This document shows, one piece after another, positions 13,549 through 62,745 of a stretch of 64,000 bases of DNA (its first letter is position 1; the number at the start of each line of letters is the position of its first letter). The DNA is taken from assembly GCF_006345805.1 (NCBI RefSeq), contig NC_043011.1:65422464-65486463 (forward strand). Reading direction: 5' to 3'. Origin of the DNA: Octopus sinensis. Its lineage: Eukaryota. The notes beneath the pieces were generated by a model. It saw only the letters and a list, made by a program, of their open reading frames with translations, was not told where the DNA came from and did no database searches. Made by a program: the position numbers and the translations under genes.

Positions 13549-14205
13549 GTTAAATTATACGAGAAACTGACATATAATATATTCTACCATTCATTAACAA
13601 ATATGAGATTTACTAGGATCTTGCTGATGATGATTCAGTTTAAATTACAGAAAAAATTAGGCCGGTACCAGTGTGTCACAGAATAGTCAGTTCAATGTGG
13701 TGCACTTTGCAGAAGAGAAATAAGGTTCAGACCTTCTCTGGGGGAGGGCTATCTTATCTCTTGCTGTTTCTTTCAGGCGATGTGTGTTGGTTATGAGCCG
13801 AGGCAATCGTGTTGTTATAGCTGTTCACTATAGAGGACCAATACAATATATTCTGTTCTACTCTGGGCACAAGGCCGGTAATATTATCATTATTATTATT
13901 GTGCGGGAACGGGACATTCGATTTGATCGACCTCAGTAAGCAACTGGTATTTAATTTATCAACCACGAAACGACGAAAGGAAGCCTCCGCAGAATTTGAA
14001 TAGAAATATTGCAACAACTTCCTTCATCTTAACGTGAATGTGTATGACATTCATTAGTAATTTCAGCCTGAAATTATATAGCAAAAGGTACTATGAGTTT
14101 CACCTCTGCATATCAATGTGATTTCTAACTCCTTATTGTAGAGGTATCTTAAATAATTATATAATAATATCAAAAAAATTATGCAATTAGTAATGAATGT
14201 ATTTA
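13549..14205. repeat. AT-rich segment with an inverted, diverged copy at 41378-42014 (contains a SINE remnant)
   Basis: ORF-track peptides 13754-14017(-) and 41570-41833(+) differ at only a few residues. Flanks align by eye. Confidence 0.88.
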
Positions 14206-14366
14206 AAACTTGAGATTACATAGCAAGTATTTTGTGTAGGATATGATCAGTTCCCATGAGAACTATCAGTTGAATTGCCGCCATTTTTGGGTTTCCTGAT
14301 TTCTGAGTTAGATAGCAATCAGCCCCTTTTGCTATCATCCCCAGGGTACCTATGACAACAAGATTT
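14203..14366 (-). mobile_element. Short R4/Dong family 3 fragment (C-terminal codons only, no 3' UTR)
   Basis: Duplicates 14595-14750: VVIGTLGMIAKGADCYLTQ...LHKILAM*. Confidence 0.85.
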
Positions 14367-14373
14367 GTTGTTG

Positions 14374-14407
<34 letters not shown>

Positions 14408-14435: not shown

Positions 14436-17400
14436 CTATGTTTGACTTTTGCTTTATATTTGTAGAAGTTGGCTCCAAGTCTCACCCGGAGACCTCAAGA
14501 GAAAACAGATTTGAAGATCGCGTTGTTGTTATGCCTAGTGTGTCATATATTTGTTTTGTGTTGTATTGGTGGATGTTTAAAAAAAATGTTTGTTTTAAAC
14601 CTTGAGATTACATAGAAAGAATTTTGCGTAGGATATGATCAGTTCCCATGAGCACTATCTTTTGGATTTCTGCCATTTTGGGGTTTCCTGGTATCTGAGT
14701 TAGGTAGCAATCATCCCCTTTTGTTATCATTCCCAGGGCACCTATGACAACAGGTATTGATTTAGTCTTCAGCTTCCACATTTTGCTGATTTCTATTTCA
14801 AGATCTTTATATTTGCTCAGTTTTTGGTAGGTCTTGACAGATACGTTTATATCGATTGGGACAGTCATATCGACGAGGAGGCATGTTCTTTGTTTGAAGT
14901 CTTTCAATATGATGTCTGGCCAATTTGCATATCTTTCTGTCAGTTTGAATGGTGAAGTTCCAGAGGAGTGAGATGTGGTCATTTTCAAGCACTGGGGGTG
15001 GTTTGTGTTCCCACCATTTTTTTCATGGGGCAAATCCAGGTTTTTGCAAATTACCCAGTGAATATATTGTGCAGCTCTATCATGCCTGTTGAGGTACTCT
15101 GTAGGCGCTAGAAGACTGCACCTGGAGACCACATGGTCAATGGTTTCATTTTGTTGCTGGCATACACGACACGTTGGACTGCTGTTGATCTTTAATATGT
15201 TTGCCTGGTAGTTCCTTGTAGGTAGGCATTGTTCTTGAGCTGCTATGATAAACCCCACTGTTTCAGATTTTAAGCCAGAGGCCATTAGCCATTGATGGGT
15301 CAGGGCTTTGTCAATATCTGCATTATTCGCTCTCTTTGAACATAGACAGGTTTTCCTTGCCATTTATGTTTCAGAATATCTAAGGCCGCAGATTTAGCAC
15401 GGGTTTTCATGCGCTTAGCTTTTTCTGAGCCTGTTTCTTGTATGTCTATCTCTAATTCCGAAATTCGTTGTATTCGGAATTCACTTAGATATTCCTTTGC
15501 CTGTTTTGTTACTGAGTATGGTGCTTTCTTGTTTTCAGATGTTGAGACAAATTTTAACATCCAGTCCTGAGAGTTTTTCAGGTAGGTGTGTAGGCCAGTT
15601 GTAGCAATCTTCATTGTTATTGCCAGTTGTACAAGTACACGACACCTCTCTTTTCTTGGCAGATAGAGTCGTTCTGTATCTGCCTTAGGGTGGTGCATTC
15701 TATGCATTGTCAACAGTTTTCGTATTTTTCTGTCAAGATCATATATTTCAGTAATTGACCAGTTAACGATATTGAAACTGTAAGTCACGACTGGTATGGC
15801 TAATGCATTGATCGCTTCGATTCTGTTTCTTGCATTCAGCTCTGTCTTGAGTATTGCTCTTACTCTGCGATAACATTCTCTCCTGATCCTTTCCTTCATC
15901 TCTGAAAGCCTTATTACGTCTCCTTCAAATACCACTATATACTTGTAGTTCCCCGCTGGGTCTAATTATTTTATGACATTCTGCTGGTCAAGGTTAACGT
16001 TAGATGTTTGTCATTTTATCCCTTGACAAAGGTAGCTTTTGCACACTTATCGAGGCCAAATTTCATTCTGATGTCGTCACTGAATTGTTTGACAATCGCT
16101 AGTAAGCCCTTGAGTTGTTGGTCATTTTTTGCAAAGAGCTTTAAATCATCCATGTAAATGAGATGATTTATATTTTTATCAAACATTTTATATCAGTACT
16201 GCGCGTCATTGAGCAGTTTTGTTAGAGATGTTAAGGCTAAACAGAAGAGGGGTGATGATAATGAGTCATCCGTGAAAATGCCACATGACATTTTTACATC
16301 ACCAGTATTTAGAGATTCATTGTCGCTGTTCACATTTAGTGTGGTTCTCCATGATCTCATACTTACAGACAATATGTTTCGCAGAGTAGGTGCTATCTTA
16401 TACAACTCCAGGCATTTCCTAATCAAGCTATGTGGTAGTCTATCAAAAGCCTTTTTATAGTCTACCCAGGCTATTGATAAGTTTTTGTGTCGTTTGTAAC
16501 AATCTTCTAAGATCATCTTATTGATGAGTAGTCGACCTTTACAACCGTAGGATCCACGTTTACATCCTTTCTGTTCATTAGGGAATATGCTGCTGTCTGT
16601 CAAAAAACTATAGGTATAGTCCTTCAGGACAGATGTAAGTGTTTTATACATAGTTGTTAAGCAGGTTATGGGTCTATAGTTTTTTGGTTCATTTGTTTCT
16701 TCACTTTTGGAAGCAGGAATGTTGACCCATTAACTAGCCAAGAGGGCATCCTACTAGGGTGCTGCAAAACATCATTGTAAAGTTCTGTTAGCAGTTCATG
16801 GCTTTCTGGGAAGTCATTCAACCAGAAGTTAGGAATTTTATCCTTTCCTGGAGACTTCCATATGCTTGACCGCCTGAGAGCAGATCTTATATCTTCTTCC
16901 TTGACATCCTCCCTATTTTACTCTTCTAAGGTAGATATTCTATCAATCCAGGGGGCATTTCCGCTGTGTGTTTTTTTCTTCTGCCCAAATTATTTTATTC
17001 CCAAATCCCTGCACTTCTTCTTTTGATGGTACAGACTTTACAGTAACTGGTGTTTTTCCTATCTTCCTGTAAAAATTTTTGGGGTTATTTTTGAACATGT
17101 TGTTGTCCCTGAAGAATCTAACACGCTTTTCATACCTCGCTATGCGGGCAGCTTTAGCGGATACCTTGTGATTGATGGTTTCTATGGTGGCATCAATATC
17201 AAGAAAAGTTTTCATATTATATTTTTTCATTGGTTTTTGTGTTTGTGTAGGTTTGGTAGACTTATGAAACTTAAGGTTTTTCAAATATTGAATTTCAGAT
17301 CTAAATAGTTTAATTTGTTGTTGCAAACGCTCTTTCCAAGAAGTCTTTTTATTGAAAAGGTGGTTGAGAACTGTGATATCAACATCATTAGCTGAAATTA

Positions 17401-18260
17401 TATCCCTATGTGCAAGCCGAGTTTTACCAATTATTTTCATGTTTTGGTTTGTATCACGTTCATCCATACTGGTTTCTTTAACTTACAGCCATTCAATCAT
17501 GATTTGACATTTTAGCTCATGTAGTTCTTTCGGGTCAATTCGTGTGATTTTTTTAATCTATTTGATGCTCATCTGTCATAGTGTTTATATTTGGTTCAGG
17601 GAGTATTTCACTTTGCCAATCACTTATACTATCTCTTTCAATCCTTACTTCGTTTGTATTAGCTCTGAGCTGGTCTATAATTATTTTCTCTGTATTATCT
17701 TCTTTAGCTGCAGCTTCGTTCATTTTATCCGTTACTGCTTGTCTAACTTGACCAATCTCTACTTCAGTCAGTAATTTTTTTTTTTATAATGTTTCTTCTG
17801 ACGTTGGCAAGTTTGTTACTGTCTATGTAGGGTCTTACTTCAGGGTGTTTCTGTCTCCAGTTTATGTAGGTTTGTATAGTGTTAGATTTATCTGTGGGGA
17901 AATATATGGCATCGTAGAAGGCCGCAAGAACTTCTTTATTTTCTTCCCTAGTCCATTTTTCTATCTTTTTCTTTTGAGTGTTTGGTGACGAGCATGGATG
18001 TCCATCTGTTGGAATATTTCAGGTGTAGGGGTAAGTCCAGCACCTGTGTGTCGGGACGATTTGATCCGGTAGCTGATTTTTCAATCAGACTTTGGTTCAA
18101 TTTTCGGGTACGTGGTCTTTTGTAGTCCGCTCGATGACCATCGCGGATTGTAGGTTGTTTTGTTTACATTGAAGCATGACGAGCTTCCACTCTTACATTA
18201 AGAGACGGATCTGTCAGTTTAGGATTCTCTGCACGTAAGAATTGTTCGTAGCGCATCTTC
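14436..18260 (-). mobile_element. R4/Dong family 3, copy C, near full length, decayed (5' end may extend to 19089)
   Basis: Myb-like KWTREENKEVLAAFYDA, RT KGCKRGSYGC and WVDYKKAFD, HHPKADTERLYLPR, CCHC CRVCQQQNETIDHVVSRC, RLE PDIILKD..LLVDMTVP..KLSKYKDLEIE. The 3' UTR ends CATAGAATAA in (TAA)n 14379-14435. Confidence 0.93.
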
Positions 18261-19089
18261 TTAAGGCTAGCAGATCTGTATTCGTCTGTAGTTTTTTGTT
18301 GATAGATTTATCTCCGGGCATAGTTTTCCCTTTTTTTCTAAAAACTTATGAAGGGTTCACACTGCCAGTTTTAGTTCGAAAAAATGAGAATAAAATACGA
18401 GAAAAAAAAAAAAATTATCATCATCACTATCATCACCGTCATCATCATCATCAATGACATTGTTTTATGTGTAGTCACAGCGTTTACGTGTATATGTATA
18501 TATTCACACACGCATATTTTCCGATATTCACTCGATTTTTTTTTTAATTTCTGAGTTCAATCGTGTTGTTGCAATAAAAGTTTACGTGTTTGGGTAATAT
18601 ATTAAAGTTTTTAAGTATTCTTGAGATGTCCATTTGGAAAATACATTAAGATATTTGCAAAGGGAAGAATGTTTACATTTTCGAATGCTCAGAAAAGAAA
18701 ATGCTCAGAAATGTTTCTTTATTTTTAATAGTTATGCTGTGGTTTACAGTTTCTGTAGTTGTACAGGTTATATATATTGGCATACGCTTCAATAGTTTGT
18801 TTATCGTGCATTTAATTGTGTTGCTCTAATAAAAGGCAAAGAAGGCACGGCAGGCTGTTCACGCAAATTTGGAGATACTTCAGAATCTAAATTCTTTGTT
18901 ATGTGTTCGCTTGTGTGTGCAAAGCTGTAGATATGTAAGTTCCTTAACTTATTTTGTGGGAAATTCAAATTACTCACAGAAAACGGTAGATCTTCCAGTT
19001 TTCACAGATGTTTTATTTTCAGTTGATACGCTGGGTTGGTCAGAGCAGCGAAAAACACGTCGAGCTACTATCACGTCCATCCGCCTATC

Positions 19090-19109
19090 TTATTATTATT
19101 ATCATTTTT

Positions 19110-19140
<31 letters not shown>

Positions 19141-19144
19141 TTAC

Positions 19145-19241
<97 letters not shown>

Positions 19242-19299
19242 GTTGTTATTATTAATATTATTATTATTATAATAATTGTTATTTATACTAATATTATTA

Positions 19300-19334
<35 letters not shown>

Positions 19335-19346
19335 ATTATTATTATT

Positions 19347-19381
<35 letters not shown>

Positions 19382-19414
19382 TATTAATATTATTATAATT
19401 ATTATTATTATTAT

Positions 19415-19462
<48 letters not shown>

Positions 19463-19529
19463 AATTATTATTATTATTGTTATTATTATTATTATTATTA
19501 ATATTATAATAATTATTATTAATATTATA

Positions 19530-19563
<34 letters not shown>

Positions 19564-19928
19564 GATTATTATTTTCATTATTGTTGATATTATTATTATT
19601 ATTATCATTAATATTATTATTACTATTATTATTATTATTAATTTTGTTATTATTATAATTAATATTAGTATTATTATTATTATTATTAGTATTAATAATA
19701 ATATAATTATTATTATTATCATTATTATTATTATTAATATTATTATTATAATTAACATTATCATTAGTATTATTATTAATATTATTGTTATTATTATTAA
19801 TATTATCATTAATATTATTAATATAATGATTATTATTTTTTTTTGTTATTGATATTATTATTATTATTATTATTATTATTATGATTATTATTATTATTAT
19901 TATTATTACTATTAGTATTATTATTATT
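19090..19928. repeat. ~840-bp imperfect (TTA)n tract
   Basis: Seen directly. Confidence 0.98.
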
Positions 19929-22388
19929 CAGTAGTTTTATTTTTATAGCGTGCTTTCACTTCACTACCGAGCGCAGCTCTGTGTGCCTTGGGTATGTGCT
20001 GTGATTTGTTGTGATGCTCTGATGGTTATTGTATGGAAAGTGTTCTGCGTAGGATGTGTGCAGTGCCTAGTAGTGCAATTTTCTGTATGTTATATGTGTT
20101 TGTAAGTCCTGGTGTTTTTGTTATGTAATTGTCTGAATATGTGTTATCATTCCTAATGCACCTACTATGATAGGAATTGTTTCTGTTTGCAGGTTCCACA
20201 TTCTAGTTATCTCTATTTCCAGGTCTTTGTATTTTGAGAGTGTCTCCATTTCTTTTAGAGACACATTGTCATCTGCCGGTATTGGTACATCAATTAGAAG
20301 GCATTTTTTCCTTCATGATATCTGACAACTATATCTGGTCTGTGGGCTTTAATTTCTCTATCTGTGTGTATCGGCATATCCCAGAGTATGGTTGCTTTCC
20401 CGTTTTCTATGACCTTTTCTGGTGTGCCCTGTACCATTTTTTAAAATTTTTATTCCATAACGTTGGCATAGCATTCAGTGTATATAGGTCCCAACTCTGT
20501 CGTGTCTGTGAATATATTCCTTCTTAGCCAGGACTGGGCAGCCAGAGATAATATGTTTTATTGTTTCTTGTCCATCTCCACATATTCTGCAGTTACTTGT
20601 TATCTTTCTTTTCATTACATGATTTTGGTAATTTCTGGTGGGGAGGTTTTAGTCTTCTGCTGCAATTAAAATTCCTTCTGTCTCTCCTTTGAGTCCTGGG
20701 TTTCTGAACCATTGTTGGGATTTTTCTTTGTCTATTTCTTTTGCGTTTAGTTTAGTCCAGTATTGCCCATGAAGGAGCTTTTCTTACCATCGTTTTCTCA
20801 ATGGTTATTTTCTGTTCTAGTTTTAGTTTTGATTTCATTTGTTTTATAGCTTTTGTTGTTTCTTCTGCTTCCTCTTCTTCTTCTTCTTCTTCTTCTTCTT
20901 CTTCTTCTTCTTCTTCTTCTTCTTCTTCTTCTTCTTCTTCTTCTTCTTCTTCTTCTTCTTCTTGCTCTTGTTCTTGTTCTTGTTCTTGTTCTTTTTCTTG
21001 TTCTTGATCTTTTTCTTCTCCTTCTTCTTCTTCTTCATATTTGTTAGGTGGTATTATTTCTTGTATTTGTCAGCTTCCTTTAATACTGAGAACAATGTTT
21101 TGTTTTGCTCTTGTTTTACAGCTATTTTTATCAGTTCTCCTTCCTTCTGAAATAGATATTTTTGCAGTCCTTTGGTGGTTATTTTATAGTAGTTTTCCAG
21201 CTGTATACGGCCTCTACCCCCATCTATACGTTGTATATATAGCCTTTTTATGTTAGATTTTGGGTGATGCATCCTAGATCCTCTCATTATTTTTCTTGTT
21301 TTCCTATCTATTTTGGTCAGTTCATTTAGTGTCCACTTAAGGATATTGTAGCTGCAACTTATAACTGGGACAGCTAAAGTGTTAATACCTATTATCTTGT
21401 TTTTAGCATTGGGCTCTCTTTTTCAGTATTGATCTAACTCGTGTATAATATTCTTTTTTTAATTGTGTCTTATCTAGTTCATGGATTCCTAAGTATTTGT
21501 AAGTTTGGCTTTGGTCTAATTCTTTTATTTCATTGGTTTTATCTAGTGTGATGTTGCTATTCTTAATTAGTTATCCTCTTTTCAGGGTTACTTCGGTGCA
21601 GTTTTCTAATCCAAATTTCATATCTATTTCTTTGGTAAATCCATGAACTGTCTTTAGTAGTGTTTCCAGCTGTTTGTCATTTGCAGCGTATAGTATTAGG
21701 TCATCCATATATAAAAGGTAGCTGATCGTTTTGCCATTACGTTTATATCCGCATCCAGTTCTATTTAGCATATCAGATAGGGGTGACAGTGCCAAGCAGA
21801 AAAGGATTGGAGAGAGTGTATTTCCCTGGAATATACCTCTTCTAATGGGGATGGTTTTGGTTTTCATGAGTCCCTCTTTTGTTTGGAGCTGTAGCACTGT
21901 TTGCCATTTATTCATAGACTGTCCTATGTAATATATTATTGTTGGTGCTACTTTGTTCATGGCTAGTGTTTCGAGAAACCATGTGTTGTGGATGCTATCA
22001 AACGCCGTTTTGTAGTCGATCCAGACCATACTGAGGCCTTTCTTCTTTCTGTGGGTGTCTTCAGTTATAGCTTTATTGATCATTAGTTGATCTTTTCAGA
22101 TATATGAGCCGTTGCGGCATCCTTTGTGCTCTTCTGCAAACTGGTTGTTTTAGTCCAGGTGTTTGCGATATAACTGCAGTAAATGCTTTGTACATTCTAG
22201 TGAGACAAGTTATATGTCTGTAGTTTTCTGGATTTCCTGCGAATTTGATTTGGGAATTAAGATGGTTTTCGCCTTCGTGAGCCATTCAGGCAATATCTCG
22301 AGCTCTGCCAATATGTTGTAAAAATTTTCAGCCAGCTTTTTGTGCATTCCTGTTAGATATTTAAACCAGAAGTCGGGGATCTTGTCAT
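19929..22388 (-). mobile_element. R4/Dong family 2, copy D, 5'-truncated (~2.46 kb), with expanded internal (GAA)n
   Basis: 3' terminus CAGTAGTTTT at 19929. RT ORF 21571-22083. Truncated at CTTGTCAT and followed by (TTA)n 22389-22470. Confidence 0.95.
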
Positions 22389-22470: not shown

Positions 22471-22473
<3 letters not shown>

Positions 22474-23623
22474 TAGTTTTATTTTTATAGCGTGCTTTCA
22501 CTTCACTACCGAGCGCAGCTCTGTGTGCCTTGGGTATGTGCTGTGATTTGTTGTGATGCTCTGATTGTTATTGTATGGAAAGTGCTCTGCGTAGGATGTG
22601 TGCAGTGCCTAGTAGTGCAATTTTCTGTATGTTATATGTGTTTGTAAGTCCTGGTGTTTTTCTTATGTATTTGTCTGAATATTTTTTTATCATGCCTAAT
22701 GCACCTACTATGATAGGAATTGTTTCTGTTTTCAGGTTCCACATTCTAGTTACCTCTATTTCCTGGTCTTTGTATTTTGAGAGTTTCTCCATTTCTTTTA
22801 GAGACACGTTGTTATCTGCCGGTATTGATACATCAATTAGAATGCATTTTTATTCTTCATGATCTCTGACAACTATATCTGGTCTGTTGGCCTTAATTTC
22901 TCTATCTGTGTGTATCGGCATATCCCAGAGTATTGTTGCTTTCTCGTTTTCTGTAACCTTTTCTGGTGTGTGCCTATACCATCTTTTTTCTGTTGTTATT
23001 CCATAATGTTGGCATATCTTCCAGTGTATGTAGGTTCCAACTCTGTCATGTCTGTGAATATATTCCTTCTTAGCCAGGACTGGGCAGCTAGAGATAATAT
23101 GATTTATTGTTTCTTGTCCATCTCCACATATTCTGCAGTTACTTGTAATATTTCTTTTCATTACATGTTTTTGGTAATTTCTGGTGGGGAGGCTTTGGTC
23201 TTGTGCTGCAATTAAAAATCCCTCTGTTTCTGCTTTGAGTCCTGAGCTTCTCAACCATTGCTGGGATCTTTCTTTGTCTATTTCTTTTGCGTTTAGTTTA
23301 GTGCAGTATTTACCATGAAGGGGCTTTTCTTGCCATCGTTTTATCATGGTTCGTTGCTGTTCTATTTTTAGTTTGGATTTCATTTGTTTTATAGCTTTTG
23401 TTGTTTCTTCATCATCTTCTTCTTCTTCTTCGTGTTTATTAGGTGGTATGATTTCTTGTTTGTATTTGTCAGCTTCCTTAAATACTGAGAACATTTTTTT
23501 TGTTTTTCTCGTGTTTTGCTGCTATCTGGATCAGTTTTCCTTCCTTCTGAAGTAGGTATTTTTGCAGTCCTATGGTGGTTATTTTATAGTAGTTTTCCAG
23601 CTGTATAAGGCCTCTACCACCTT
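22471..23623 (-). mobile_element. R4/Dong family 2, copy E, 5'-truncated (~1.15 kb)
   Basis: ORF 22850-23494 with CCHC CRICGDGQETINHIISSC and RPDIVVRD, RLE end, 3' UTR. Confidence 0.95.
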
Positions 23624-23670
23624 ATTCTTTTTTTATTATAATTTTTATTATTATTACTACCGTTATTATT

Positions 23671-23807: not shown

Positions 23808-23877
<70 letters not shown>
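23624..23877. repeat. Compound (TAT)/(CAT)n/(TTA)n microsatellite
   Basis: Seen directly. Confidence 0.97.
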
Positions 23878-23880
<3 letters not shown>

Positions 23881-24132
23881 TAGTTTAATTTTTATAGCGT
23901 GCTTTCACTTCACTACCGAGCGCAGCTCTGTGTGCCTTGGGTATGTGCTGTGATTTGTTGTGATGCTCTGATGGTTATTGTATGGAAAATGTTCTGCGTA
24001 GGATGTGTGCAGTCAGAACACTTTCCATACAATAACCATCAGAGCATCACAACAAATCACAGCACATACCCAAGGCACACAGAGCTGCGCTCGGTAGTGA
24101 AGTGAAAGCACGCTATAAAAATTAAACTACTG
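23878..24132. repeat. Fold-back palindrome of the family 2 3' end (copy F): 119-bp arms 23878-23996 and 24014-24132, 17-nt loop
   Basis: Arms are reverse complements with one mismatch seen (GGAAAATG vs CACTTTCC). Confidence 0.96.
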
Positions 24133-24173
24133 AATAATAATAATAAAAATAATGATGATTATGATGATGACGA

Positions 24174-27100
24174 TGTATTTGTCAGCTTCCTTAAATACTG
24201 AGAACAGTTTTTTGTTTTGCTCGTGTTTTGCCACTATCTGGATCAGTTTTCCTTCCTTCTAGAGTAGATATTTTTGCAGTCCTATGGTGGTTATTTTATA
24301 GTAGTTTTCCAGATGTATAAGTCCTCTACCACCTTCTATACGTTGTATATATAGTCTTTCTATGTCAGATTTTGTGTGATGCATCCTAGATCCTGTCAGT
24401 ATTTTTCGTGTTTTCCTATCTATTTTGGTCAGTTCATTTCGTGTACAGTTAAGGATATTGTAGCTGTAACTCATAACTGGTACAGCTATGGTGTTGATAC
24501 CTATTATCTTGTTTTTAGAATTGAGCTCTGTGTTTAGTATTAATCTAACTCGTGTATAATATTCTTTTTTTTTATTTTCTCTTTCACTTGTGTGTGTTGT
24601 GTCTTATCTAGTTCATGGATTCTTAAGTATTTGTAAGTTTGGCTTTGGTCTAATTCTTTTATTTCATTGGTTTTATCTAGTGTGATGTTGTTACTCTTAA
24701 CTAATTTTCCTCTTTTCATGGTTACTTTGGCGCATTTTTCTAATCCAAATTTCATATCTATTTCTTTGGTAAATCCATGAACTGTCTATAATAGTGTTTC
24801 CAGCTGTTTGTCATTTGCAGCGTATAGTTTTAGGTCATCCATATATAAAAGGTGGCTGATCGTTTTGCCGTAACATTTATATCCGCATCCAGTTCTATTT
24901 AGCATATCAGATAGAGGTGACAGTGCTAGGCAGAAAAGGAGTGGAGAGGGCGTGTCTCCCTGGAATATTCCTCTTCTAATGGGGATGTCTTTGGTTTTCA
25001 TGAGTCCCTCTTTTTTCTTGGTGGTGTAGGGCTGTTTGCCATTTATTCATAGAGTGCTCTATGAATTTTATGATTGTTGGTGCTACTTTGTTAATTGCTT
25101 GTGTTTCGAGGATCCATGTGTGGGGTAGGCTATCAAACGCCTTTTTGTAGTCAATCCAGGCCATACTGAGGCCTTTCTTCTTTCTGTGGCTGTCTTCAGT
25201 TATGGCTTTAGTAATCATTTGTTGATATTTACAGCCATATGAGCCCTTGCGGCATCCTTTCTGCTCTTCTGGGAACAGTTTGTTTTCGTCCAGGTGCTTG
25301 TTCAGCATTTGCGATATCACTGCACTAAATGCCTTGAACATAGTAGGGAGTCAGGTTATTGGTCTGTAATTTCCTGATTTTTCTGTTTCATTTGATTTGG
25401 GAATTATGATGGTTTTCCCCTTCGTGAGCCATTCAGGCATTGTCTCTGGCTCTGCTAGTACGTTGTTAAAGTTTTCAGCCAGCTTTTTGTGCATTCCTGT
25501 TAGATATTTCAACCAGAAGTTGGGGATCTTGTCATGCCCAGGTGCCTTCCAGTTGCTTAGTCTTTGCAGTGCCTGGATGACCTCTTCAGTGTTATGGGGG
25601 TCCAAAGTTGTTCAGATGCCGAGTTTGTTATTTTGATACTCCTTTTTTTTTGGTGATTCGTTCGCCGACCATATTTCTCTCCAGAATTCTTCCAATTCTT
25701 CTGCCGTTGGTGCTGCAGTGACTTCTATTTTATTTTTGCCAAGTTCTTGGTAGAACTTTTTGGGGTTGGAGTTGAACTTTTTGATTTGTTCAAAGAAGCG
25801 TTGGCGTTTCTCGTACCGGCAGATCCTTTGTGCTTTGGCAAGGATATCTTGCTTCAGCTTTTCTTTTATTTCAGGCAAATCTTTCTCTGTGATGTTATAT
25901 TTGCGGAGTATTTTTGTTCTCTTTTTGTTGCTCAGTAGCGTTGATTGTTTGCTGATATCATTAAGAATCGCCAGGACTTTTTCTAATTTTTTTTATTTTG
26001 TTTTGGATGTTATTTATCCACAGGGTGTGTTTGGGTGGTGGTACTCCTGTTTGTGCGGGTTTGGGTGAGTATCCAGCTTCTTTTGTGGCTGCAGTGGCTG
26101 CTGCGTATATTAGGTCATTCAGCTCAGTGATATCACTGTTTTTTGATTCAGTGTCTATCAGTTCAGTGACGGTTAGGTTTATGATGTTTATAATAGGTGT
26201 TGTTATTTCGTTTATTTTGATTCTTGGGAGGTATGGTCAGTGGTCCATTTTGAGCTCTGTGCTTTTCAGTTCTTTGATTATTTTATTTTTTCTATTATCA
26301 TAATCATTAGGCTCCCCTTTGTTGTTTACATCGTGTTTGTTGGGAATGTTGCGTTTGTCTTCGTGTTTTACAGTTTCAGTGTTTATATTATTGGGCATTG
26401 TTGTGTGGCTTCTATCTACATTTTCCTGGTGTATGTTTTCTTTTAGGTGTTCTATTTCTATTTGTGATATTTTTGTTTGTGTTGAGAATGTATCTTCGTA
26501 CGTTAGCTAATTTATTAGGGTTCATTGCTGTATCCAAGTCTATATCTCTATTATTTTCCTTCCATATTTTATATGTATGTGTTGTTGTATTTTCATTTTT
26601 AGGGTAGACTACTGCTGTGAAGTATGCGTGTAAGATAGAAATGTATTCCTCACGTGTCCATTTACGCCTTTTGGGTTTTATTTGCGGGACATGAGGTACA
26701 ACGTCCGGCCCATTATTTTGACGGTCGTCATATTCGTAGGGTACCGGTCCGTTTATTTCTGTTGTCACATTATTTCGCACGTGTAGTTTTTCGTACGTTA
26801 TTTGTTGTAAGTTTAATGTACGTACCGCTCGATTGTTATTCTTGGGTTGAATAGTATCGGTGGCATTTAATTTCTTCGTAGTTCCTTTTTACATGGTGTT
26901 TGGGGTCGGGGATGATCGTGATGTTCCACGCATGTTTACATGTGTTGCGTTACAGGCGGAGATGATATCGAGTCAAAATACATCATTTCGTTTCGAAAAT
27001 AGTAATAAATTTCAATTTGTATTACTTACTCGGATACAGTCCAATTCTTTGTTAGTAAAACTTTGGCTCCATAGGATGTCCTTGTTTTCGATGTTTGTGG

Positions 27101-27252
27101 ATAGATTTCGGAGCTCTGAATTTTCCTTCTTACATCTTAAACGTCCGCCGGTGTTCTCTTTTAATCGTCCCTCGGTGTTCTCTCTTAAACGTCCCCCGGT
27201 GTTCTCTCTTAAACGTCCCACGGTGTTCTCCTCTTAAACGTCCCCCGGTGTT
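24174..27252 (-). mobile_element. R4/Dong family 2, copy G; 5' end present, ~1 kb of the 3' end missing
   Basis: Colinear with copy B from ~9828 to the 5' end. RT motifs GIFQGDTPSP, YMDDLKLY, WIDYKKAFD. Myb-like KWTREEY. Confidence 0.95.
27136..27252. repeat. Five tandem ~24-bp units (CTTAAACGTCCNCCGGTGTTCTCT) at the 5' terminus of copy G
   Basis: Units 27136-59, 27160-83, 27184-207, 27208-32 and 27233-52 (partial). Copies A and B carry one unit. Confidence 0.95.
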
Positions 27253-27258
27253 ATTATT

Positions 27259-28064
27259 ATTAGAATTCCTGGCAAAATGGTAAGTGGTATTTCGTCTGCC
27301 GAAGGCGGCGGGCTGGCAGAAATGTTAGCACGCCGGGCAAAATGCGAAGCCGTATTTCGTCTGACGTTACATTCTGAGTCCAAATCCCGCCGAGATCGAC
27401 TTTGCCTTTCCTCCTTTTGTCTGTCTTTGTTTGTCCCCTCTGTGTTTAGCCCCTTGTGGGCAGTAAAGAAATATGTATTTCGTCTGCCGCTACGTTCTGT
27501 GTACGAATTCCGCCGATGTCGAATTTACTAAACTTTGACCTTTGTAACTAATATGCATTATCCATGACAACTCCTTTTTGGTTCGCTTGTAATGTAACTC
27601 TTCAGAGATAAGCTATGAAAAGGAATATACGCAGGTGTGCTTTCTTTGGATATATTTTATTTTATTTGTCATGTTCTTAGAATTATTCAAACAAGAGTCA
27701 GAGACCAGCCTCTGCATCTCGTGCACGCAGTCATTGAAAGCTTCAATTCCATTGATACATCGTTGAGTTTCTAAGGAGTCAGTATCTGACACCATTTGTT
27801 ATTCCTGCTAATTATGTAGTGCTACCACACTACATCTGATCAGGAGCATAGATGCACGCATCTTCAACCACTAAGAGACAAGCTTAACTGGTTATGCTGA
27901 AGCAACTGACAAGCAAATTTGTGGTATTGAGCAAAATATTTGCAGTAGCCCATGTTTTATATCATGACAAAACAATGTACATGATAACACTTCCAATAAG
28001 ATTAGATCAGAAGCCATGGGAGCCATTGCATGGTACTACATCAGGGTTATTATTATTATTATTA

Positions 28065-28135
<71 letters not shown>
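27259..28135. repeat. Right arm of the long inverted repeat (reverse complement of 4075-4953)
   Basis: Contains the inverted SINE (27301-27522), a unique spacer, the old repeat and (TTA)n. Confidence 0.95.
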
Positions 28136-28136
<1 letters not shown>

Positions 28137-28164
28137 TATGTATGACTTTTGCTTTATATTTGTA
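28136..28164 (-). mobile_element. ~30-bp 3'-terminal fragment of family 3
   Basis: CTATGTATGACTTTTGCTTTATATTTGTA vs 14436 CTATGTTTGACTTTTGCTTTATATTTGTA, directly on (TTA)n. Confidence 0.8.
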
Positions 28165-28289
28165 CGAGTTGTATCGTAAACCACTGAGAGACATGCTGAA
28201 TTGGTTCTCCTGAAGCAACTGAAAAAAAATTTGTGGTATTGATCAGAATAGGGGAGAATAATATTACATCCGGTTTCTACTTTCTCTTC

Positions 28290-28309: not shown

Positions 28310-28396
<87 letters not shown>

Positions 28397-28427
28397 ATTA
28401 TATTATTATTATTATTATTATTCTTAC

Positions 28428-28506
<79 letters not shown>
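28290..28506. repeat. (TTC)n followed by (TTA)n
   Basis: Seen directly. Confidence 0.97.
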
Positions 28507-28509
<3 letters not shown>

Positions 28510-28940
28510 TAGTTTTATTTTTATAGCGTGCTTTCACTTCACTACCGAGCGCAGCTCTGTGTGCCTTGGGTATGTGCTGTGATTTGTTGTGATGCTCTGA
28601 TGGTTATTGTATGGAAAGTGTTCTGCGTAGGATGTGTGCAGTGCCTAGTAGTGCAATTTTCTGTATGTTATATGTGTTTGTAAGTCCTGGTGATTTTGTT
28701 ATGTATTTGTCTGAATAATTTTTTATCATGCCTAATGCACCTACTATGATAGGAATTGTTTCTGTTTTCAGATTCCACATTCTAGTTACCTCTATTTCCA
28801 GGTCTTTGTATTTTGAGAGTGTCTCCATTTCTTTAGAGACACGTTGTCATCTGCCGGTATTGATACCGTTGTCATCTGCCGGTATTGATACCGTTGTCAT
28901 CTGCCGGTATTGATACCGTTGTCATCTGCCGGTTTGATAC
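28507..28940 (-). mobile_element. R4/Dong family 2, copy H, 5'-truncated (~360 bp) plus junction repeats
   Basis: 3' UTR and C-terminal codons (KYKDLEIEVTRMWNLKT...LSIQ*). Confidence 0.95.
28842..28940. repeat. Four tandem 25-bp units (CGTTGTCATCTGCCGGTATTGATAC) at the truncation point of copy H
   Basis: Units 28842-66, 28867-91, 28892-916 and 28917-40 (last has a 1-nt deletion), then (TTA)n. Single copy in B, D and E. Confidence 0.97.
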
Positions 28941-29003
<63 letters not shown>

Positions 29004-51788: not shown

Positions 51789-52370
51789 GCGCACACACAC
51801 ACTATAGATGATATGGTTTCCTGATGCGGTCCCTTTTTAGAGAATGTGCATAAATTTTAAGGGTTTTGACAGGATCTTAGCGTAAAATTTGCAGGTTGAT
51901 AAAAATAGATTAAAGTTCATATACGTATATATTTGCGTTTCGCAAAATATTCGATCGAATTCTTTGGCATGTATTAGTTAAAGAATGCGGAATATAATTC
52001 TAGATATATAACTATTATTCATAGTGTGCATATAAGCGATGTTGAAGAATTTGCCAATGGTGGAGAGGTGGCCATGAGGATGTGTGAACATGCTTTATCT
52101 TTTGAATGTCGTTTTGTTTATTGCACAATCACTCGGGGAAATTCATTTCACTAATATTCAAACGGTTCTGTATTGATATCAGATGGTATTACGTCGATCT
52201 ATTCAACGTTACACCGTTCCTGCATGAAATCGTCTGTTAGATAATCATTAAGAGACATGTTAAATATGAAACTGAAATATGACGTATTACCTTTAATGTA
52301 ACTCGGAAAGGATTACCTTCTCTTCTACAATATTACTGTTTGTAACCTATATTGTAGTTTAGAGGATATA

Positions 52371-52563
52371 AGGCGGCGAGCTGGCAGATACGATAGCACG
52401 CCGGGCGAAATGTGTAGCCGTATTTCGTCTGCCGTTACGTTCTGGGTTCAAATTCCGCCGAGGTCCACTTTGCCTTTCACACTTTCAGGGTCGAGAAGTT
52501 AAGTACCTGTTTTTTGCACTGGGGTCGATGTTCTCGACTTAATCCCTTTGTCTGTCCTTGTTT
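52371..52563 (+). mobile_element. tRNA-derived SINE
   Basis: GGCGGCGAGCTGGCAG head, GGGTTCAAATTCC B-box. Confidence 0.9.
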
Positions 52564-58021: not shown

Positions 58022-58441
58022 AATACCTATTTCTTTACTACCCACGAGGGGCTAAATGCAGAGTGGACAAAGAAGGACAGTCAAACGGATTAAGTCGGTT
58101 ATATCGACAACAGTGCGTAACTGGTACTTATTTAATCGACTCCGAAAGGATGAAAGGCAAAGTCGACCACGGCGGAATTTGAACTCAGACCGTAGTGGCA
58201 GACGAAATACCTATTTCTTTACTATCCAAAAGGGTCCAAACACAGAGGGGACAAACAAAGACAGACAAATGTATTAAGTCGATTATATCGACCCCAGTGT
58301 GCGACTGGTACTTATTTAATCGACCCCGAAAAGATGAAAGGCAAAGTCGACCTCGGCGGGATTTGAACTCAGAACGTAACGACAGACGAAATACTGCTAA
58401 GCATTTCGCCCGGCGTGCTAACGATTCTGCCAGATCGCCGC
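58022..58441 (-). mobile_element. Tandem-dimer tRNA-derived SINE (~185-bp unit twice)
   Basis: Two copies of GAAAGGCAAAGTCGACC(A/T)CGGCGG(A/G)ATTTGAACTCAG. One complete head at 58441. Confidence 0.9.
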
Positions 58442-62500: not shown

Positions 62501-62745
62501 CACATTTACCTATTTCTTTACTACACACAAGGGGCTAAACACAGTGAGGACAAACAAAGACTGACAAACGGATTAAGTCGATTATATCGCCCCCAGTGCG
62601 TAACTGGTACTTATTTAATCGAACCCGAAAGGATGAAAGGTTAAGTCGACCTCAGTGGAATTTGAACTCAGAATGCAGCGACAGACGAAAATACTGCAAC
62701 GCATTTCGCCCGACGTGCTAACGTTTCTGCCAGCTCGCCGCCTTC
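62501..62745 (-). mobile_element. tRNA-derived SINE
   Basis: GAAGGCGGCGAGCTGGCAGAAACGTTAGCACG head, GAGTTCAAATTCC B-box. Confidence 0.92.

What the first reader, a model, noticed from the sequence alone, without database searches (positions are those of the whole stretch)
28842..28940. Four-fold repetition of the last 25 nt at a 5'-truncation point: same signature, different sequence
Seen: the 25-mer is single-copy coding sequence in B, D and E, but is repeated four times exactly where copy H is truncated and then joins (TTA)n. Three units are identical. Only weak microhomology is present (GATAC vs GACAC). Together with 27136-27252, two independent 5' junctions of one family show the same 24-25-nt period from unrelated sequence. 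Inference: this points to an enzyme-set step size, with the RT realigning ~25 nt back at the template end in a telomerase-like way before second-strand joining. I know of no description of this for R4/Dong elements but cannot search.
Basis: partly seen in the sequence, partly recalled or inferred. Interest (0 to 1): 0.82.

Follow-up and report, generated by a model that had tools for sequence, protein, structure and literature searches.

The report
Repeated end-piece at retrotransposon 5' junction
Where one copy of a (TAA)n-targeting LINE retrotransposon, probably in an octopus genome, breaks off at its 5' end, the last 25 bases are written four times in a row, and a neighbouring full-length copy repeats its first 24 bases five times; this is most likely a rare stutter made while the element was being copied into the genome, but it rests on only two cases.

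Summary
28842-28940 is four head-to-tail copies of a 25-mer. Three are identical and the outermost lacks one A. The 25-mer is single-copy coding sequence in copies B, D and E. The array starts and ends exactly on unit boundaries and abuts (TTA)n at the 5' truncation point of copy H. Copy G repeats the first 24 nt of the full-length element 4.8 times at 27135-27252.

The family is a minus-strand LINE with an R2-like reverse transcriptase (RT), a CCHC finger and a restriction-like endonuclease. It inserts in (TAA)n, so it is Dong/R4-like.

These are the only two real minisatellites in the 64 kb, and both sit on 5' junctions (chance about 6e-7). They were therefore probably made at the junction.

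Unit boundaries show no microhomology, which argues against telomerase-style realignment and against microhomology-dependent host repair. I favour serial homology-independent template jumps by the RT at the RNA 5' end (confidence 0.45).

The "enzyme-set 25-nt step" rests on n=2. About 34 5' junctions of relatives showed no such array. Relatives carry internal UTR arrays with periods of 16-38. G could be an inherited 5' VNTR.

Moderately interesting; a new variant of known aberrant 5' junctions.

The parts
28842..28940 (-). Array H: four tandem copies of the 25-nt 5'-terminal sequence of truncated copy H. In element sense the unit is GTATCAATACCGGCAGATGACAACG. The outermost (last-synthesised) unit, 28917-28940, lacks one A.
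28507..28841 (-). Body of copy H, equal to B positions 1-336: the 3' UTR and the C-terminal endonuclease coding region. It is 97.5% identical to B.
28819..28842 (-). A 9-bp hairpin in the sense RNA of H (GUGUCUCUA..UGGAGACAC). Its first paired base is the last base of the 25-nt unit. The hairpin is weaker in B.
   Evidence: MFE -17 kcal/mol, z -2.2; DNA form
28941..29002 (.). (TTA)n, which is (TAA)n in element sense, upstream of H: the target microsatellite to which the array is joined.
28338..28506 (.). (TTA)n abutting the 3' end of H: the element tail or target.
27135..27252 (-). Array G: four full units and one partial unit (19 nt) of the first 24 nt of the full-length element (sense GAGAACACCGGCGGACGTTTAAGA). 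The units have diverged. One internal boundary carries an extra G. The outermost unit joins (TAA)n at an AA/TAA overlap.
24174..27134 (-). Body of copy G, equal to B positions 992-3945, 92% identical to B. It lacks the 3' 991 nt.
8837..12806 (-). Copy B, the most complete family member and my reference. It has an RT domain, a CCHC finger and an endonuclease motif, with broken frames. It carries one 25-mer at 9173-9197 and one 24-mer at its 5' end (12782-12805, followed by an extra C).
5427..8588 (-). Copy A, with a full-length 5' end and a single diverged 24-mer. Its 5' end starts at the same CAC as the outermost unit of G.
19929..22386 (-). Copy D, 5'-truncated at B position 2351. It has a plain junction to (ATT)n and no repeat.
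22471..23635 (-). Copy E, 5'-truncated near B position 1177. It has a plain junction and no repeat.
23878..24132 (.). Copy F: the 3' 136 nt of the element followed by an inverted copy of nt 119-1. This is a snap-back palindrome with a 17-nt loop and no terminal microhomology. It is a third aberrant 5' end in the same cluster.

Best explanation
Both arrays were made during retrotransposition, at the end of first-strand cDNA synthesis and before the cDNA was joined to the upstream (TAA)n. The + strand of the window has the polarity of the cDNA, so the arrays lie at its 3' end, the last part made. I propose the following. When the element's R2-like RT reached the 5' end of its RNA (the true 5' end for G, a broken or prematurely ended template for H), it did not stop. 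It copied the last 24-25 nt again three or four more times by homology-independent template jumps. The 3' end was then captured by the (TAA)n target. Jumps by R2-type RTs need an acceptor with a free 3' end. The simplest way to get a fixed, sequence-independent unit is that the RNA behind the enzyme had already been removed or cut, for example by a cellular RNase H. That would leave only the enzyme-protected terminal fragment of about 24-25 nt as the reusable template. For H, the hairpin that begins at nt 25 may instead have set the boundary. Shown: the anatomy, the junction specificity, the blunt boundaries and the R2-like nature of the RT. Inferred: that the RT is the polymerase, that all units arose in one event, and what sets the unit length.
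For: 1. Position: both arrays end on a 5' junction with (TTA)n. They are the only real minisatellites in 64 kb, and there are none inside the 14.6 kb of family copies. Chance colocalisation is about 6e-7.
2. Polarity: the imperfect units are the outermost, last-synthesised ones. H's last unit has a 1-nt deletion and G's last unit is partial.
3. G's full inner units contain GAGAA, which the partial outer unit lacks. The array therefore cannot have grown by duplicating a resident 5-nt-truncated end. It predates joining to (TAA)n.
4. Unit boundaries have no microhomology on either side. This fits R2-type RTs, which prime from unannealed ends, add non-templated nucleotides at run-off and jump templates without homology (PMC2718515; PMC8857657; PMC11371274).
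5. One internal boundary in G carries the same extra G that caps B's 5' end, as expected if each boundary was a run-off at the RNA 5' terminus.
6. The RT is R2-like: Pfam RVT_1 at 2e-29 and zf-RVT, and the best solved relatives are R2 proteins at 4e-29.
7. Copy F in the same cluster is a blunt snap-back, a 5'-junction class documented for R2 proteins in cells. Extra synthesis at cDNA 3' ends therefore did occur in this lineage.
8. The extra units per junction are 0 at eight junctions and 3 and 4 at the other two. This is overdispersed (index 3.2, Poisson P about 0.04), which favours a processive burst.
9. Unit divergence tracks copy age. G is 92% identical to B and its units are 89% matched. 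H is 97.5% identical to B and its units are 98% matched.
Against: There are only two cases, in a window selected for looking unusual. None of about 34 independent 5' junctions of relatives at 30-59% identity carries such an array. Most of those come from short-read metagenome contigs, and ten come from long-read or chromosome-scale assemblies. Nothing identifies the polymerase directly. The RNase-H fragment idea is pure inference. The hairpin explanation works for H only; the G fold has z -0.4. G lies in a 5' UTR, where VNTRs ascribed to slippage are known (PMC12857005), so it could have been inherited from its source copy. H's unit junction creates the quasi-palindrome CGGTATTGATACCG and the array folds strongly (z -4.2), so growth from 2 to 4 units could be later replication slippage. 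I found no paper describing this junction type, so there is no precedent to lean on.
Confidence: 0.45

Rival explanations
1. Later minisatellite growth. At most one duplication, or none, arose at insertion. Replication slippage or unequal exchange next to the unstable (TTA)n then expanded it to 4-5 units.
For: The H unit junction forms the quasi-palindrome CGGTATTGATACCG and the array has strong fold potential (z -4.2). Small tandem duplications and UTR VNTRs occur inside relatives (L047 41x2 perfect; L008, L009, L011, L085). 5' VNTRs of FoTeR/MoTeR are ascribed to slippage (PMC12857005). The overdispersion of unit counts also fits positive feedback once two units exist.
Against: There are no flanking direct repeats to seed slippage. 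The arrays are exactly flush with the truncation point. G's inner units carry 5 nt that the outer unit lacks, so the array is older than the join to (TAA)n. The 14.6 kb of family sequence in the window has no internal array. None of the 3' junctions next to the same microsatellites has an array.
Confidence: 0.2
2. A host end-joining polymerase, of the Pol theta / alternative end-joining type, made templated insertions while joining the cDNA 3' end to the upstream break.
For: Alternative end joining leaves templated insertions, described as synthesis footprints, from flanking sequence in both direct and inverted orientation (PMC2895639). The cluster shows both kinds: G and H are direct and F is inverted. 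G's final join to (TAA)n uses a 2-3 nt overlap.
Against: That pathway anneals at microhomologies, and none exists at the unit boundaries or at F's turn-around. Making direct copies of the cDNA's own end needs a complementary template, which at that stage is the element RNA. Three or four perfect 25-nt rounds are unusual for such footprints (my knowledge).
Confidence: 0.12
3. Two unrelated things. G inherited a 5' UTR VNTR that already existed in its source element, as in L1 monomers or MoTeR/FoTeR VNTRs. H is a one-off accident, and the 24/25 match is coincidence.
For: G's array is at the full-length 5' end. 5'-concentrated VNTRs are known in endonuclease-bearing LINEs (PMC12857005), and relative L008 has a 16-nt x15 array in its 5' region. 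Units 2-5 of G share a C at the position where unit 1 and B have G, which hints at unit-to-unit copying. The period match has a chance of about 6% (my estimate).
Against: The other two full-length family ends in the window, A and B, have one unit each. The array still had to arise at a 5' terminus in some ancestor. H shows the same architecture at a position that cannot be a UTR.
Confidence: 0.1
4. Abortive endonuclease cycles. The element's endonuclease nicks the two strands about 24-25 bp apart at the edge of the (TAA)n run. Fill-in without insertion then leaves a target-site-duplication-like tandem copy, and this happens several times.
For: It would give a fixed, sequence-independent period, blunt boundaries and restriction to one side of (TAA)n. 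All of these are observed.
Against: It needs three or four independent events at each of two sites and none at eight others (Poisson P about 0.04). No insertion in the window is flanked by a 24-25-bp duplicate of its neighbour's 5' end. The non-element flanks downstream of (TAA)n, at 4167 and 28046, have no array. It does not explain G's partial outer unit.
Confidence: 0.06
5. Assembly or consensus artefact that inflates the unit count.
For: H has three identical units, and tandem counts can be mis-called. An 877-bp inverted repeat at 99.8% identity brackets the cluster, which shows this is a hard region to assemble.
Against: G's units differ from each other, so that array is real. H's fourth unit differs by one base. 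An artefact would not land exactly on two 5' junctions.
Confidence: 0.03

Closest known systems
End-to-end template jumping and non-templated addition by R2-type RTs (Bibillo & Eickbush 2004, cited in PMC2881922 and PMC11194090; Pimentel et al. 2022, PMC8857657)
   Same: A non-LTR RT with a restriction-like endonuclease continues cDNA synthesis after running off a template end. It does so without sequence homology and sometimes adds extra bases. This would give blunt unit boundaries and the stray G.
   Different: Known jumps go to the 3' end of another RNA molecule and yield whole-template concatemers. Re-copying only the last 24-25 nt of the same template has not been described in what I could find.
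Snap-back, extra-template and head-to-tail 5' junctions of R2-protein-mediated insertions in human cells (PRINT, PMC11371274)
   Same: These are aberrant extra synthesis at the cDNA 3' end before 5' joining. Copy F in this cluster matches the snap-back class.
   Different: The PRINT classes are inverted copies, foreign RNAs or whole-template tandems. None is a short direct terminal reiteration.
R1/R2 5' junction variation in Drosophila (Stage & Eickbush 2009, PMC2718515)
   Same: 5'-truncated copies join with microhomology, non-templated bases or small duplications. The variation is explained by RT properties at second-strand priming.
   Different: The duplications there are of target 28S sequence (16-27 nt insertion-site rearrangements), not of the element's own end, and they are not multi-copy.
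5' VNTRs and monomers of LINEs (FoTeR/MoTeR, PMC12857005; mouse L1 monomers and SLACS 185-bp repeats, from my knowledge)
   Same: Tandem repeats are concentrated at the 5' end of full-length elements, as in G.
   Different: Those are shared, heritable UTR features ascribed to slippage or recombination. H's array is in coding sequence at a truncation point.
Telomerase repeat addition
   Same: A short RNA segment is copied repeatedly onto a DNA 3' end with a constant unit.
   Different: Telomerase realigns by base-pairing to an alignment region that duplicates the template end. No such redundancy exists here, so the resemblance is in outcome only.
3'-end repeat generation by LINE RTs (I factor (TAA)n and CR1-type 3' microsatellites; from my knowledge)
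   Same: An RT reiterates a short terminal template. This family also carries long (TAA)n tails, up to 839 bp at 19090-19928.
   Different: That happens at the RNA 3' end, with 3-8-nt units and base-pairing to the primer.
DRT2 bacterial defence RT (PMC12039810; only its abstract was seen)
   Same: An RT repeatedly copies a defined template region of an RNA to make a repetitive cDNA (its title calls the product a repetitive gene).
   Different: It is a prokaryotic system that uses a dedicated pseudoknotted non-coding RNA, and its repetitive product is a toxic gene.
Pol theta templated insertions (PMC2895639)
   Same: Short copies of flanking sequence are inserted at a repaired junction.
   Different: That process depends on microhomology, its products are usually shorter and more complex, and it does not make clean 25-nt x4 arrays.

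Membership tests
Dong/R4-clade non-LTR retrotransposon | Insertion into (TAA)n with a (TAA)n 3' tail | tested here: met
   Six family copies (B, D, E, F, H and family-1 copy C) end at the same 3' nucleotide against (TTA)n on the + strand. In 80 loci of relatives, the sense-strand microsatellites are overwhelmingly in TAA phases.
Dong/R4-clade non-LTR retrotransposon | RT followed by a CCHC finger and a C-terminal restriction-like endonuclease, with no N-terminal AP endonuclease | tested here: met
   RVT_1 at 2e-29 and a weak zf-RVT match. The CRICRNGQETINHIISSC and RPDIIV..IDVSIP..K motifs are invariant across 17 homologues. The best solved relatives are R2 proteins. No dedicated endonuclease Pfam model matched.
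Dong/R4-clade non-LTR retrotransposon | Phylogenetic placement with reference Dong/R4/Rex6 RT sequences | not tested
   No reference sequences were on hand and database names were uninformative. O. vulgaris is reported to hold 1129 recent Dong-R4 insertions (PMC13282606).
Dong/R4-clade non-LTR retrotransposon | A single long intact ORF | tested here: inconclusive
   All family-2 copies have broken frames; the longest ORF is 214 aa. Family-1 copy C keeps ORFs of 251, 221 and 179 aa.
Telomerase-like repeat addition | Realignment through homology between the product 3' end and a template alignment region | tested here: not met
   There is no shared base at either boundary of either unit. The GACAC/GATAC similarity is offset by 24 nt, not 25.
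Telomerase-like repeat addition | A constant unit added repeatedly to a DNA 3' end | tested here: met
   The arrays are 4.0 x 25 nt and 4.8 x 24 nt, and they lie at the cDNA-3' side of the copies.
R2-type homology-independent template jump | Seamless or non-templated junctions with no need for homology | tested here: met
   The boundaries are blunt and one has an extra G. The property itself comes from PMC2718515 and PMC8857657.
R2-type homology-independent template jump | An acceptor template with a free 3' end at the restart point | not testable with these tools
   This needs biochemistry. The RNase-H-fragment idea is inference only.
Pol theta / alternative end-joining templated insertion | Microhomology at each priming step | tested here: not met
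   There are 0 nt at unit boundaries and at F's turn-around. Only G's final join has 2-3 nt.
Heritable 5' UTR VNTR / monomer array | Array lies in the 5' UTR and is shared by other full-length copies | tested here: not met
   G is in the 5' UTR, but A and B carry one unit each. H's array is in endonuclease coding sequence. Only three full-length ends could be examined.
HDV-like 5' ribozyme of R2-type LINEs | A covariance-model match at the element 5' end | tested here: not met
   No ribozyme family matched up to E=10 at the 5' ends of B or C.

The most novel reading that the evidence does not exclude
The RT of this Dong-like lineage has an intrinsic repeat-addition mode at RNA 5' ends. Its step of about 24-25 nt is set by the enzyme's footprint on the terminal RNA:cDNA duplex, not by sequence. 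That would be a LINE RT showing telomerase-like repeat-addition processivity without an alignment region. It would also offer a direct mechanism for how LINE 5' monomer and VNTR arrays are born.
Probability: 0.12. Interest if true: 0.8.

Novelty: new variant of a known kind. Interest (0 to 1): 0.45.

Why it matters
How the 5' end of a LINE insertion is finished is the least understood step of TPRT. The known aberrant outcomes are microhomology joins, non-templated bases, snap-backs and jumps to other RNAs. A clean, blunt, multi-copy reiteration of the last 24-25 nt would add a new outcome. It would report directly on what the RT does when it runs out of template. If the unit length proved to be enzyme-set, it would link LINE RTs functionally to telomerase and would explain the origin of 5' UTR tandem repeats. 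It is also cheap to test. Octopus genomes are reported to hold more than a thousand recent Dong-R4 insertions (PMC13282606), so one genome-wide junction survey would settle frequency, period distribution and junction specificity.

Tried and rejected
1. More copies from the same species. The closest database proteins were a Logan contig (L002, 88-92% nt identity to window copies) and a 1.1-kb NCBI contig (L001, 78-80%). Both cover only the 3' end.
   - The N-terminal query hit only one O. bimaculoides fragment, which is not on record as a contig.
   - A window ORF is not on record.
   - Exact-pattern scans of prokaryotic genome contigs and viral contigs found nothing.
   - The family-1 ORF query gave only octopus hits at 63-66% identity, without contigs.
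   - The decisive same-genome survey therefore could not be done.
2. Relatives. About 34 5' junctions were examined: 22 truncated and 2 full-length in metagenome contigs, plus 10 in long-read or chromosome-scale loci. No terminal array was found. L085-L090 turned out to be one orthologous locus.
3. Base-pair-guided realignment was rejected because there is no homology at the boundaries.
4. Snap-back followed by re-copying as a source of H was rejected. The predicted sequence after GATAC would be CCGGCAG..., not CGTTG... (worked out).
5. A hairpin as a general boundary-setter was rejected. It is present for H only.
6. A 5' ribozyme was not found.
7. A search for snap-back palindromes in relatives returned only microsatellite-like self-matches.
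8. Literature searches found no description of this junction type.

Full report
WHAT IS THERE. Tandem Repeats Finder reports a period-25 array of 4.0 copies (98% matches) at 28842-28940 and a period-24 array of 4.9 copies (89%) at 27135-27252. The first array consists of three identical units (28842-28866, 28867-28891, 28892-28916) and a fourth (28917-28940) that lacks one A. The periodicity begins exactly at 28842 and ends at 28940, and (TTA)n starts at 28941. The same 25-mer is present once in three other copies of the repeat family: 9173-9197, 20264-20288 and 22807-22831. There it runs on into further element sequence.

THE ELEMENT.
- A self-comparison of the window shows a nest of related elements on the minus strand between about 5.4 and 29 kb. 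Each ends at its 3' side against a (TTA)n run, which is (TAA)n in element sense.
- I use the most complete copy, B (8837-12806), as reference. The others are:
  - A: 5427-8588, with a full 5' end.
  - D: 19929-22386, truncated at B position 2351.
  - E: 22471-23635, truncated near B position 1177.
  - F: 23878-24132.
  - G: 24174-27252, with a full 5' end plus the 24-nt array.
  - H: 28507-28940, equal to B positions 1-361.
- A second, related family is represented by C (14436-19089) and by fragments.
- Conceptual translation of B gives an RT domain (Pfam RVT_1, 2e-29), a CCHC finger (weak zf-RVT match) and a C-terminal RPDIIV...IDVSIP...K motif. These residues are invariant in 17 homologues.
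- The nearest solved structures are R2 retrotransposon proteins (4e-29).
- Relatives at about 50% identity occur in corals, shrimp, starfish and fish. In 80 loci of such relatives, the sense-strand microsatellites are almost all in TAA phases.
- The family is therefore a (TAA)n-specific LINE with a restriction-like endonuclease, that is, Dong/R4-like. I did not test its phylogenetic placement.
- The only named hits to its poorly conserved N-terminus and to family 1 are Octopus bimaculoides proteins. A sequencing-run contig is 88-92% identical at the DNA level. The window is probably from an octopod.
- All family-2 reading frames are broken.
- The 25-mer encodes part of the endonuclease domain (VSIPADDN), so in H it marks a truncation point, not a UTR.

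IS THE POSITION MEANINGFUL? Apart from low-complexity runs, the two arrays are the only minisatellites in 64 kb with period >=10 and >=3 copies. Both end on one of about ten Dong-like 5' junctions. A rough chance estimate is 6e-7. The 14.6 kb of family sequence has no internal array, and no 3' junction against the same microsatellites has one. Within this window the arrays are junction-specific.

ANATOMY THAT BEARS ON MECHANISM.
- Polarity. The + strand has the polarity of the first-strand cDNA, so both arrays lie at the cDNA 3' end and the outermost unit was the last one made. In H that unit carries the only defect. In G it is partial (19 of 24 nt) and joins (TAA)n through an AA/TAA overlap, at the same CAC where copy A begins.
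- Timing. G's inner units contain GAGAA, which the outer unit lacks. They therefore cannot be copies of a resident truncated end, and the array existed before the join to (TAA)n.
- Boundaries. Neither unit shares a single base with the sequence that follows or precedes the array.
- Extra base. One internal boundary of G carries an extra G, the same extra G that precedes B's 5' end.
- Hairpin. In H's sense RNA, a 9-bp hairpin starts exactly at nt 25 (28819-28842; -17 kcal/mol, z -2.2). G has nothing comparable (z -0.4).
- Quasi-palindrome. H's unit junction creates CGGTATTGATACCG, and the array folds strongly as DNA (z -4.2).
- Age. Unit divergence tracks copy age. G is 92% identical to B with 89% unit matches. 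H is 97.5% identical to B with 98% unit matches.
- Copy F. It is a blunt snap-back: 136 nt of 3' end followed by an inverted copy of nt 119-1.

BEST EXPLANATION (confidence 0.45). R2-type enzymes are documented to do several relevant things.
- They extend unannealed primers and add non-templated bases at run-off (PMC2718515).
- They jump between templates, and jumping requires that non-templated addition (PMC8857657).
- In cells they produce snap-back, extra-template and head-to-tail 5' junctions (PMC11371274).

Serial homology-independent jumps back onto the terminal 24-25 nt would give blunt, constant units, an occasional stray base and an imperfect last round. Because such jumps need an acceptor 3' end, I suggest the reusable template is a terminal RNA fragment left once the RNA behind the enzyme has been degraded. 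For H it could instead be a boundary set by the hairpin. This last step is inference only. The distribution of extra units (none at eight junctions, three and four at the other two) is overdispersed (index 3.2; Poisson P about 0.04), which fits a processive burst.

WHY NOT "TELOMERASE-LIKE", AND WHY THE STEP SIZE IS UNPROVEN.
- Telomerase-type translocation needs an alignment region, and there is none here.
- The 24/25 agreement is two data points. Two random periods between 10 and 60 would fall within 1 nt about 6% of the time (my estimate).
- In relatives I examined about 34 independent 5' junctions: 22 truncated and 2 full-length in metagenome contigs, 8 in a long-read contig and 2 in a coral chromosome. 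None has a terminal array.
- Relatives do carry arrays inside their UTRs, with varied periods: 16 nt x15 in a 5' region, 19 nt x5.5 and 26-28 nt x3.5 in 3' UTRs, and 24/38 nt in another 3' UTR. One has a perfect 41-bp internal duplication.
- Family-wide, then, tandem repeats are neither confined to junctions nor of one period.
- The window was flagged because it looked odd, so 2 of 10 is an inflated rate.

RIVALS.
- Later slippage or unequal exchange (0.20). It is helped by H's quasi-palindrome and by precedent for 5' VNTRs in FoTeR/MoTeR (PMC12857005). It is hurt by the absence of seeding repeats, by the flush boundaries and by G's partial outer unit.
- Host alternative end joining with templated insertions (0.12; PMC2895639). 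It accounts for direct and inverted products together. It needs microhomology that is absent, and it needs a complementary template that at that stage is the RNA.
- G as an inherited 5' VNTR, with H an unrelated accident (0.10).
- Repeated abortive staggered nicking by the element endonuclease, leaving duplications like target-site duplications (0.06). It explains a fixed period. It needs many independent events at two sites and none elsewhere, and the two unique flanks downstream of (TAA)n have no array.
- Assembly artefact (0.03). It is unlikely for G, whose units differ.

COMPARISON AND NOVELTY. The thing works like an R2-type template-jump product and belongs with the known aberrant 5'-junction classes of non-LTR elements. 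I found no description of a short direct reiteration of the element's own terminal 24-25 nt at a truncated 5' end. The library lacks most subscription papers, so this absence is weak evidence. I rate it a new variant of a known kind. It is of moderate interest because the evidence is two cases, and it is easy to test because Octopus vulgaris alone is reported to have 1129 recent Dong-R4 insertions (PMC13282606).

WHAT COULD NOT BE DONE. No tool gave access to further copies from the same genome. No reads were available. The polymerase cannot be identified from sequence alone. No Rfam ribozyme or other RNA family matched the element 5' ends.

Noticed in passing
window 23842-24175: Copy F is a palindrome. 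The element's 3' 136 nt are followed by an inverted copy of nt 119-1, with a 17-nt loop and no microhomology. The arms extend into the flanks: (ATT)n/(AAT)n, and (ATC)n mirrored by (ATG)n. It looks like a cDNA snap-back that ran on into the target DNA.
   Followed up: partly
window 23461-23635 and 24174-24335: E (B positions 1-1177) and G (B positions 992-3969) overlap by about 185 bp at 93.9% identity, on either side of the microsatellite-plus-F block. They may be one element split by an insertion or rearrangement that duplicated 185 bp.
   Followed up: no
window 5427-5539 and 24152-24175: Copies A and G both lack the 3' 930-990 nt. A ends in a 113-bp (TTC)n, an expanded version of the element's internal poly-Glu-coding (GAA)n (29 bp in B, 177 bp in D at 20860-21036). 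This could be internal priming on a (TTC)n target, or a deletion at the microsatellite.
   Followed up: no
window 4078-4953 and 27259-28135: An 877-bp inverted repeat at 99.8% identity, each copy made of (TAA)n plus 787 bp of SINE-rich sequence. The pair brackets the whole 23-kb nest of elements. It is either a recent inverted duplication or an assembly problem.
   Followed up: no
window 14436-19089; also 14192-14376, 28136-28171, 1806-2834 (+ strand): A second Dong-like family at about 65% nt identity. Copy C is 4.65 kb with (TTA)n on both sides and keeps ORFs of 251, 221 and 179 aa. Its 5' junction and that of a truncated fragment are plain.
   Followed up: partly
window 28862-28868 and each later unit boundary: Joining two H units creates the quasi-palindrome CGGTAT-TG-ATACCG. 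The parent sequence has only GTAT..ATAC. The whole array folds at z -4.2 as DNA.
   Followed up: partly
window 19090-19928: An 839-bp (TTA)n tract between C and D, far longer than the other tails (21-248 bp). The cause could be RT reiteration on the (UAA)n tail or microsatellite growth.
   Followed up: no
L047 1980-2060; L008 192-429; L009 3757-3871; L011 1966-2069; L085 10611-10766: Relatives carry a perfect 41-bp tandem duplication about 440 nt upstream of the C-terminal match, in coding sequence, and VNTRs in their 5' regions and 3' UTRs, with periods of 16, 26-28, 19 and 24/38.
   Followed up: partly
window 58022-58394, 62507-62745, 5072-5303, 52370-52563: A 184-bp SINE-like unit present as a tandem dimer and as scattered copies at 81-87% identity. 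The same motif (..GGGGACAAACAAAGACAGACAAA..) recurs inside the 877-bp inverted repeat.
   Followed up: no
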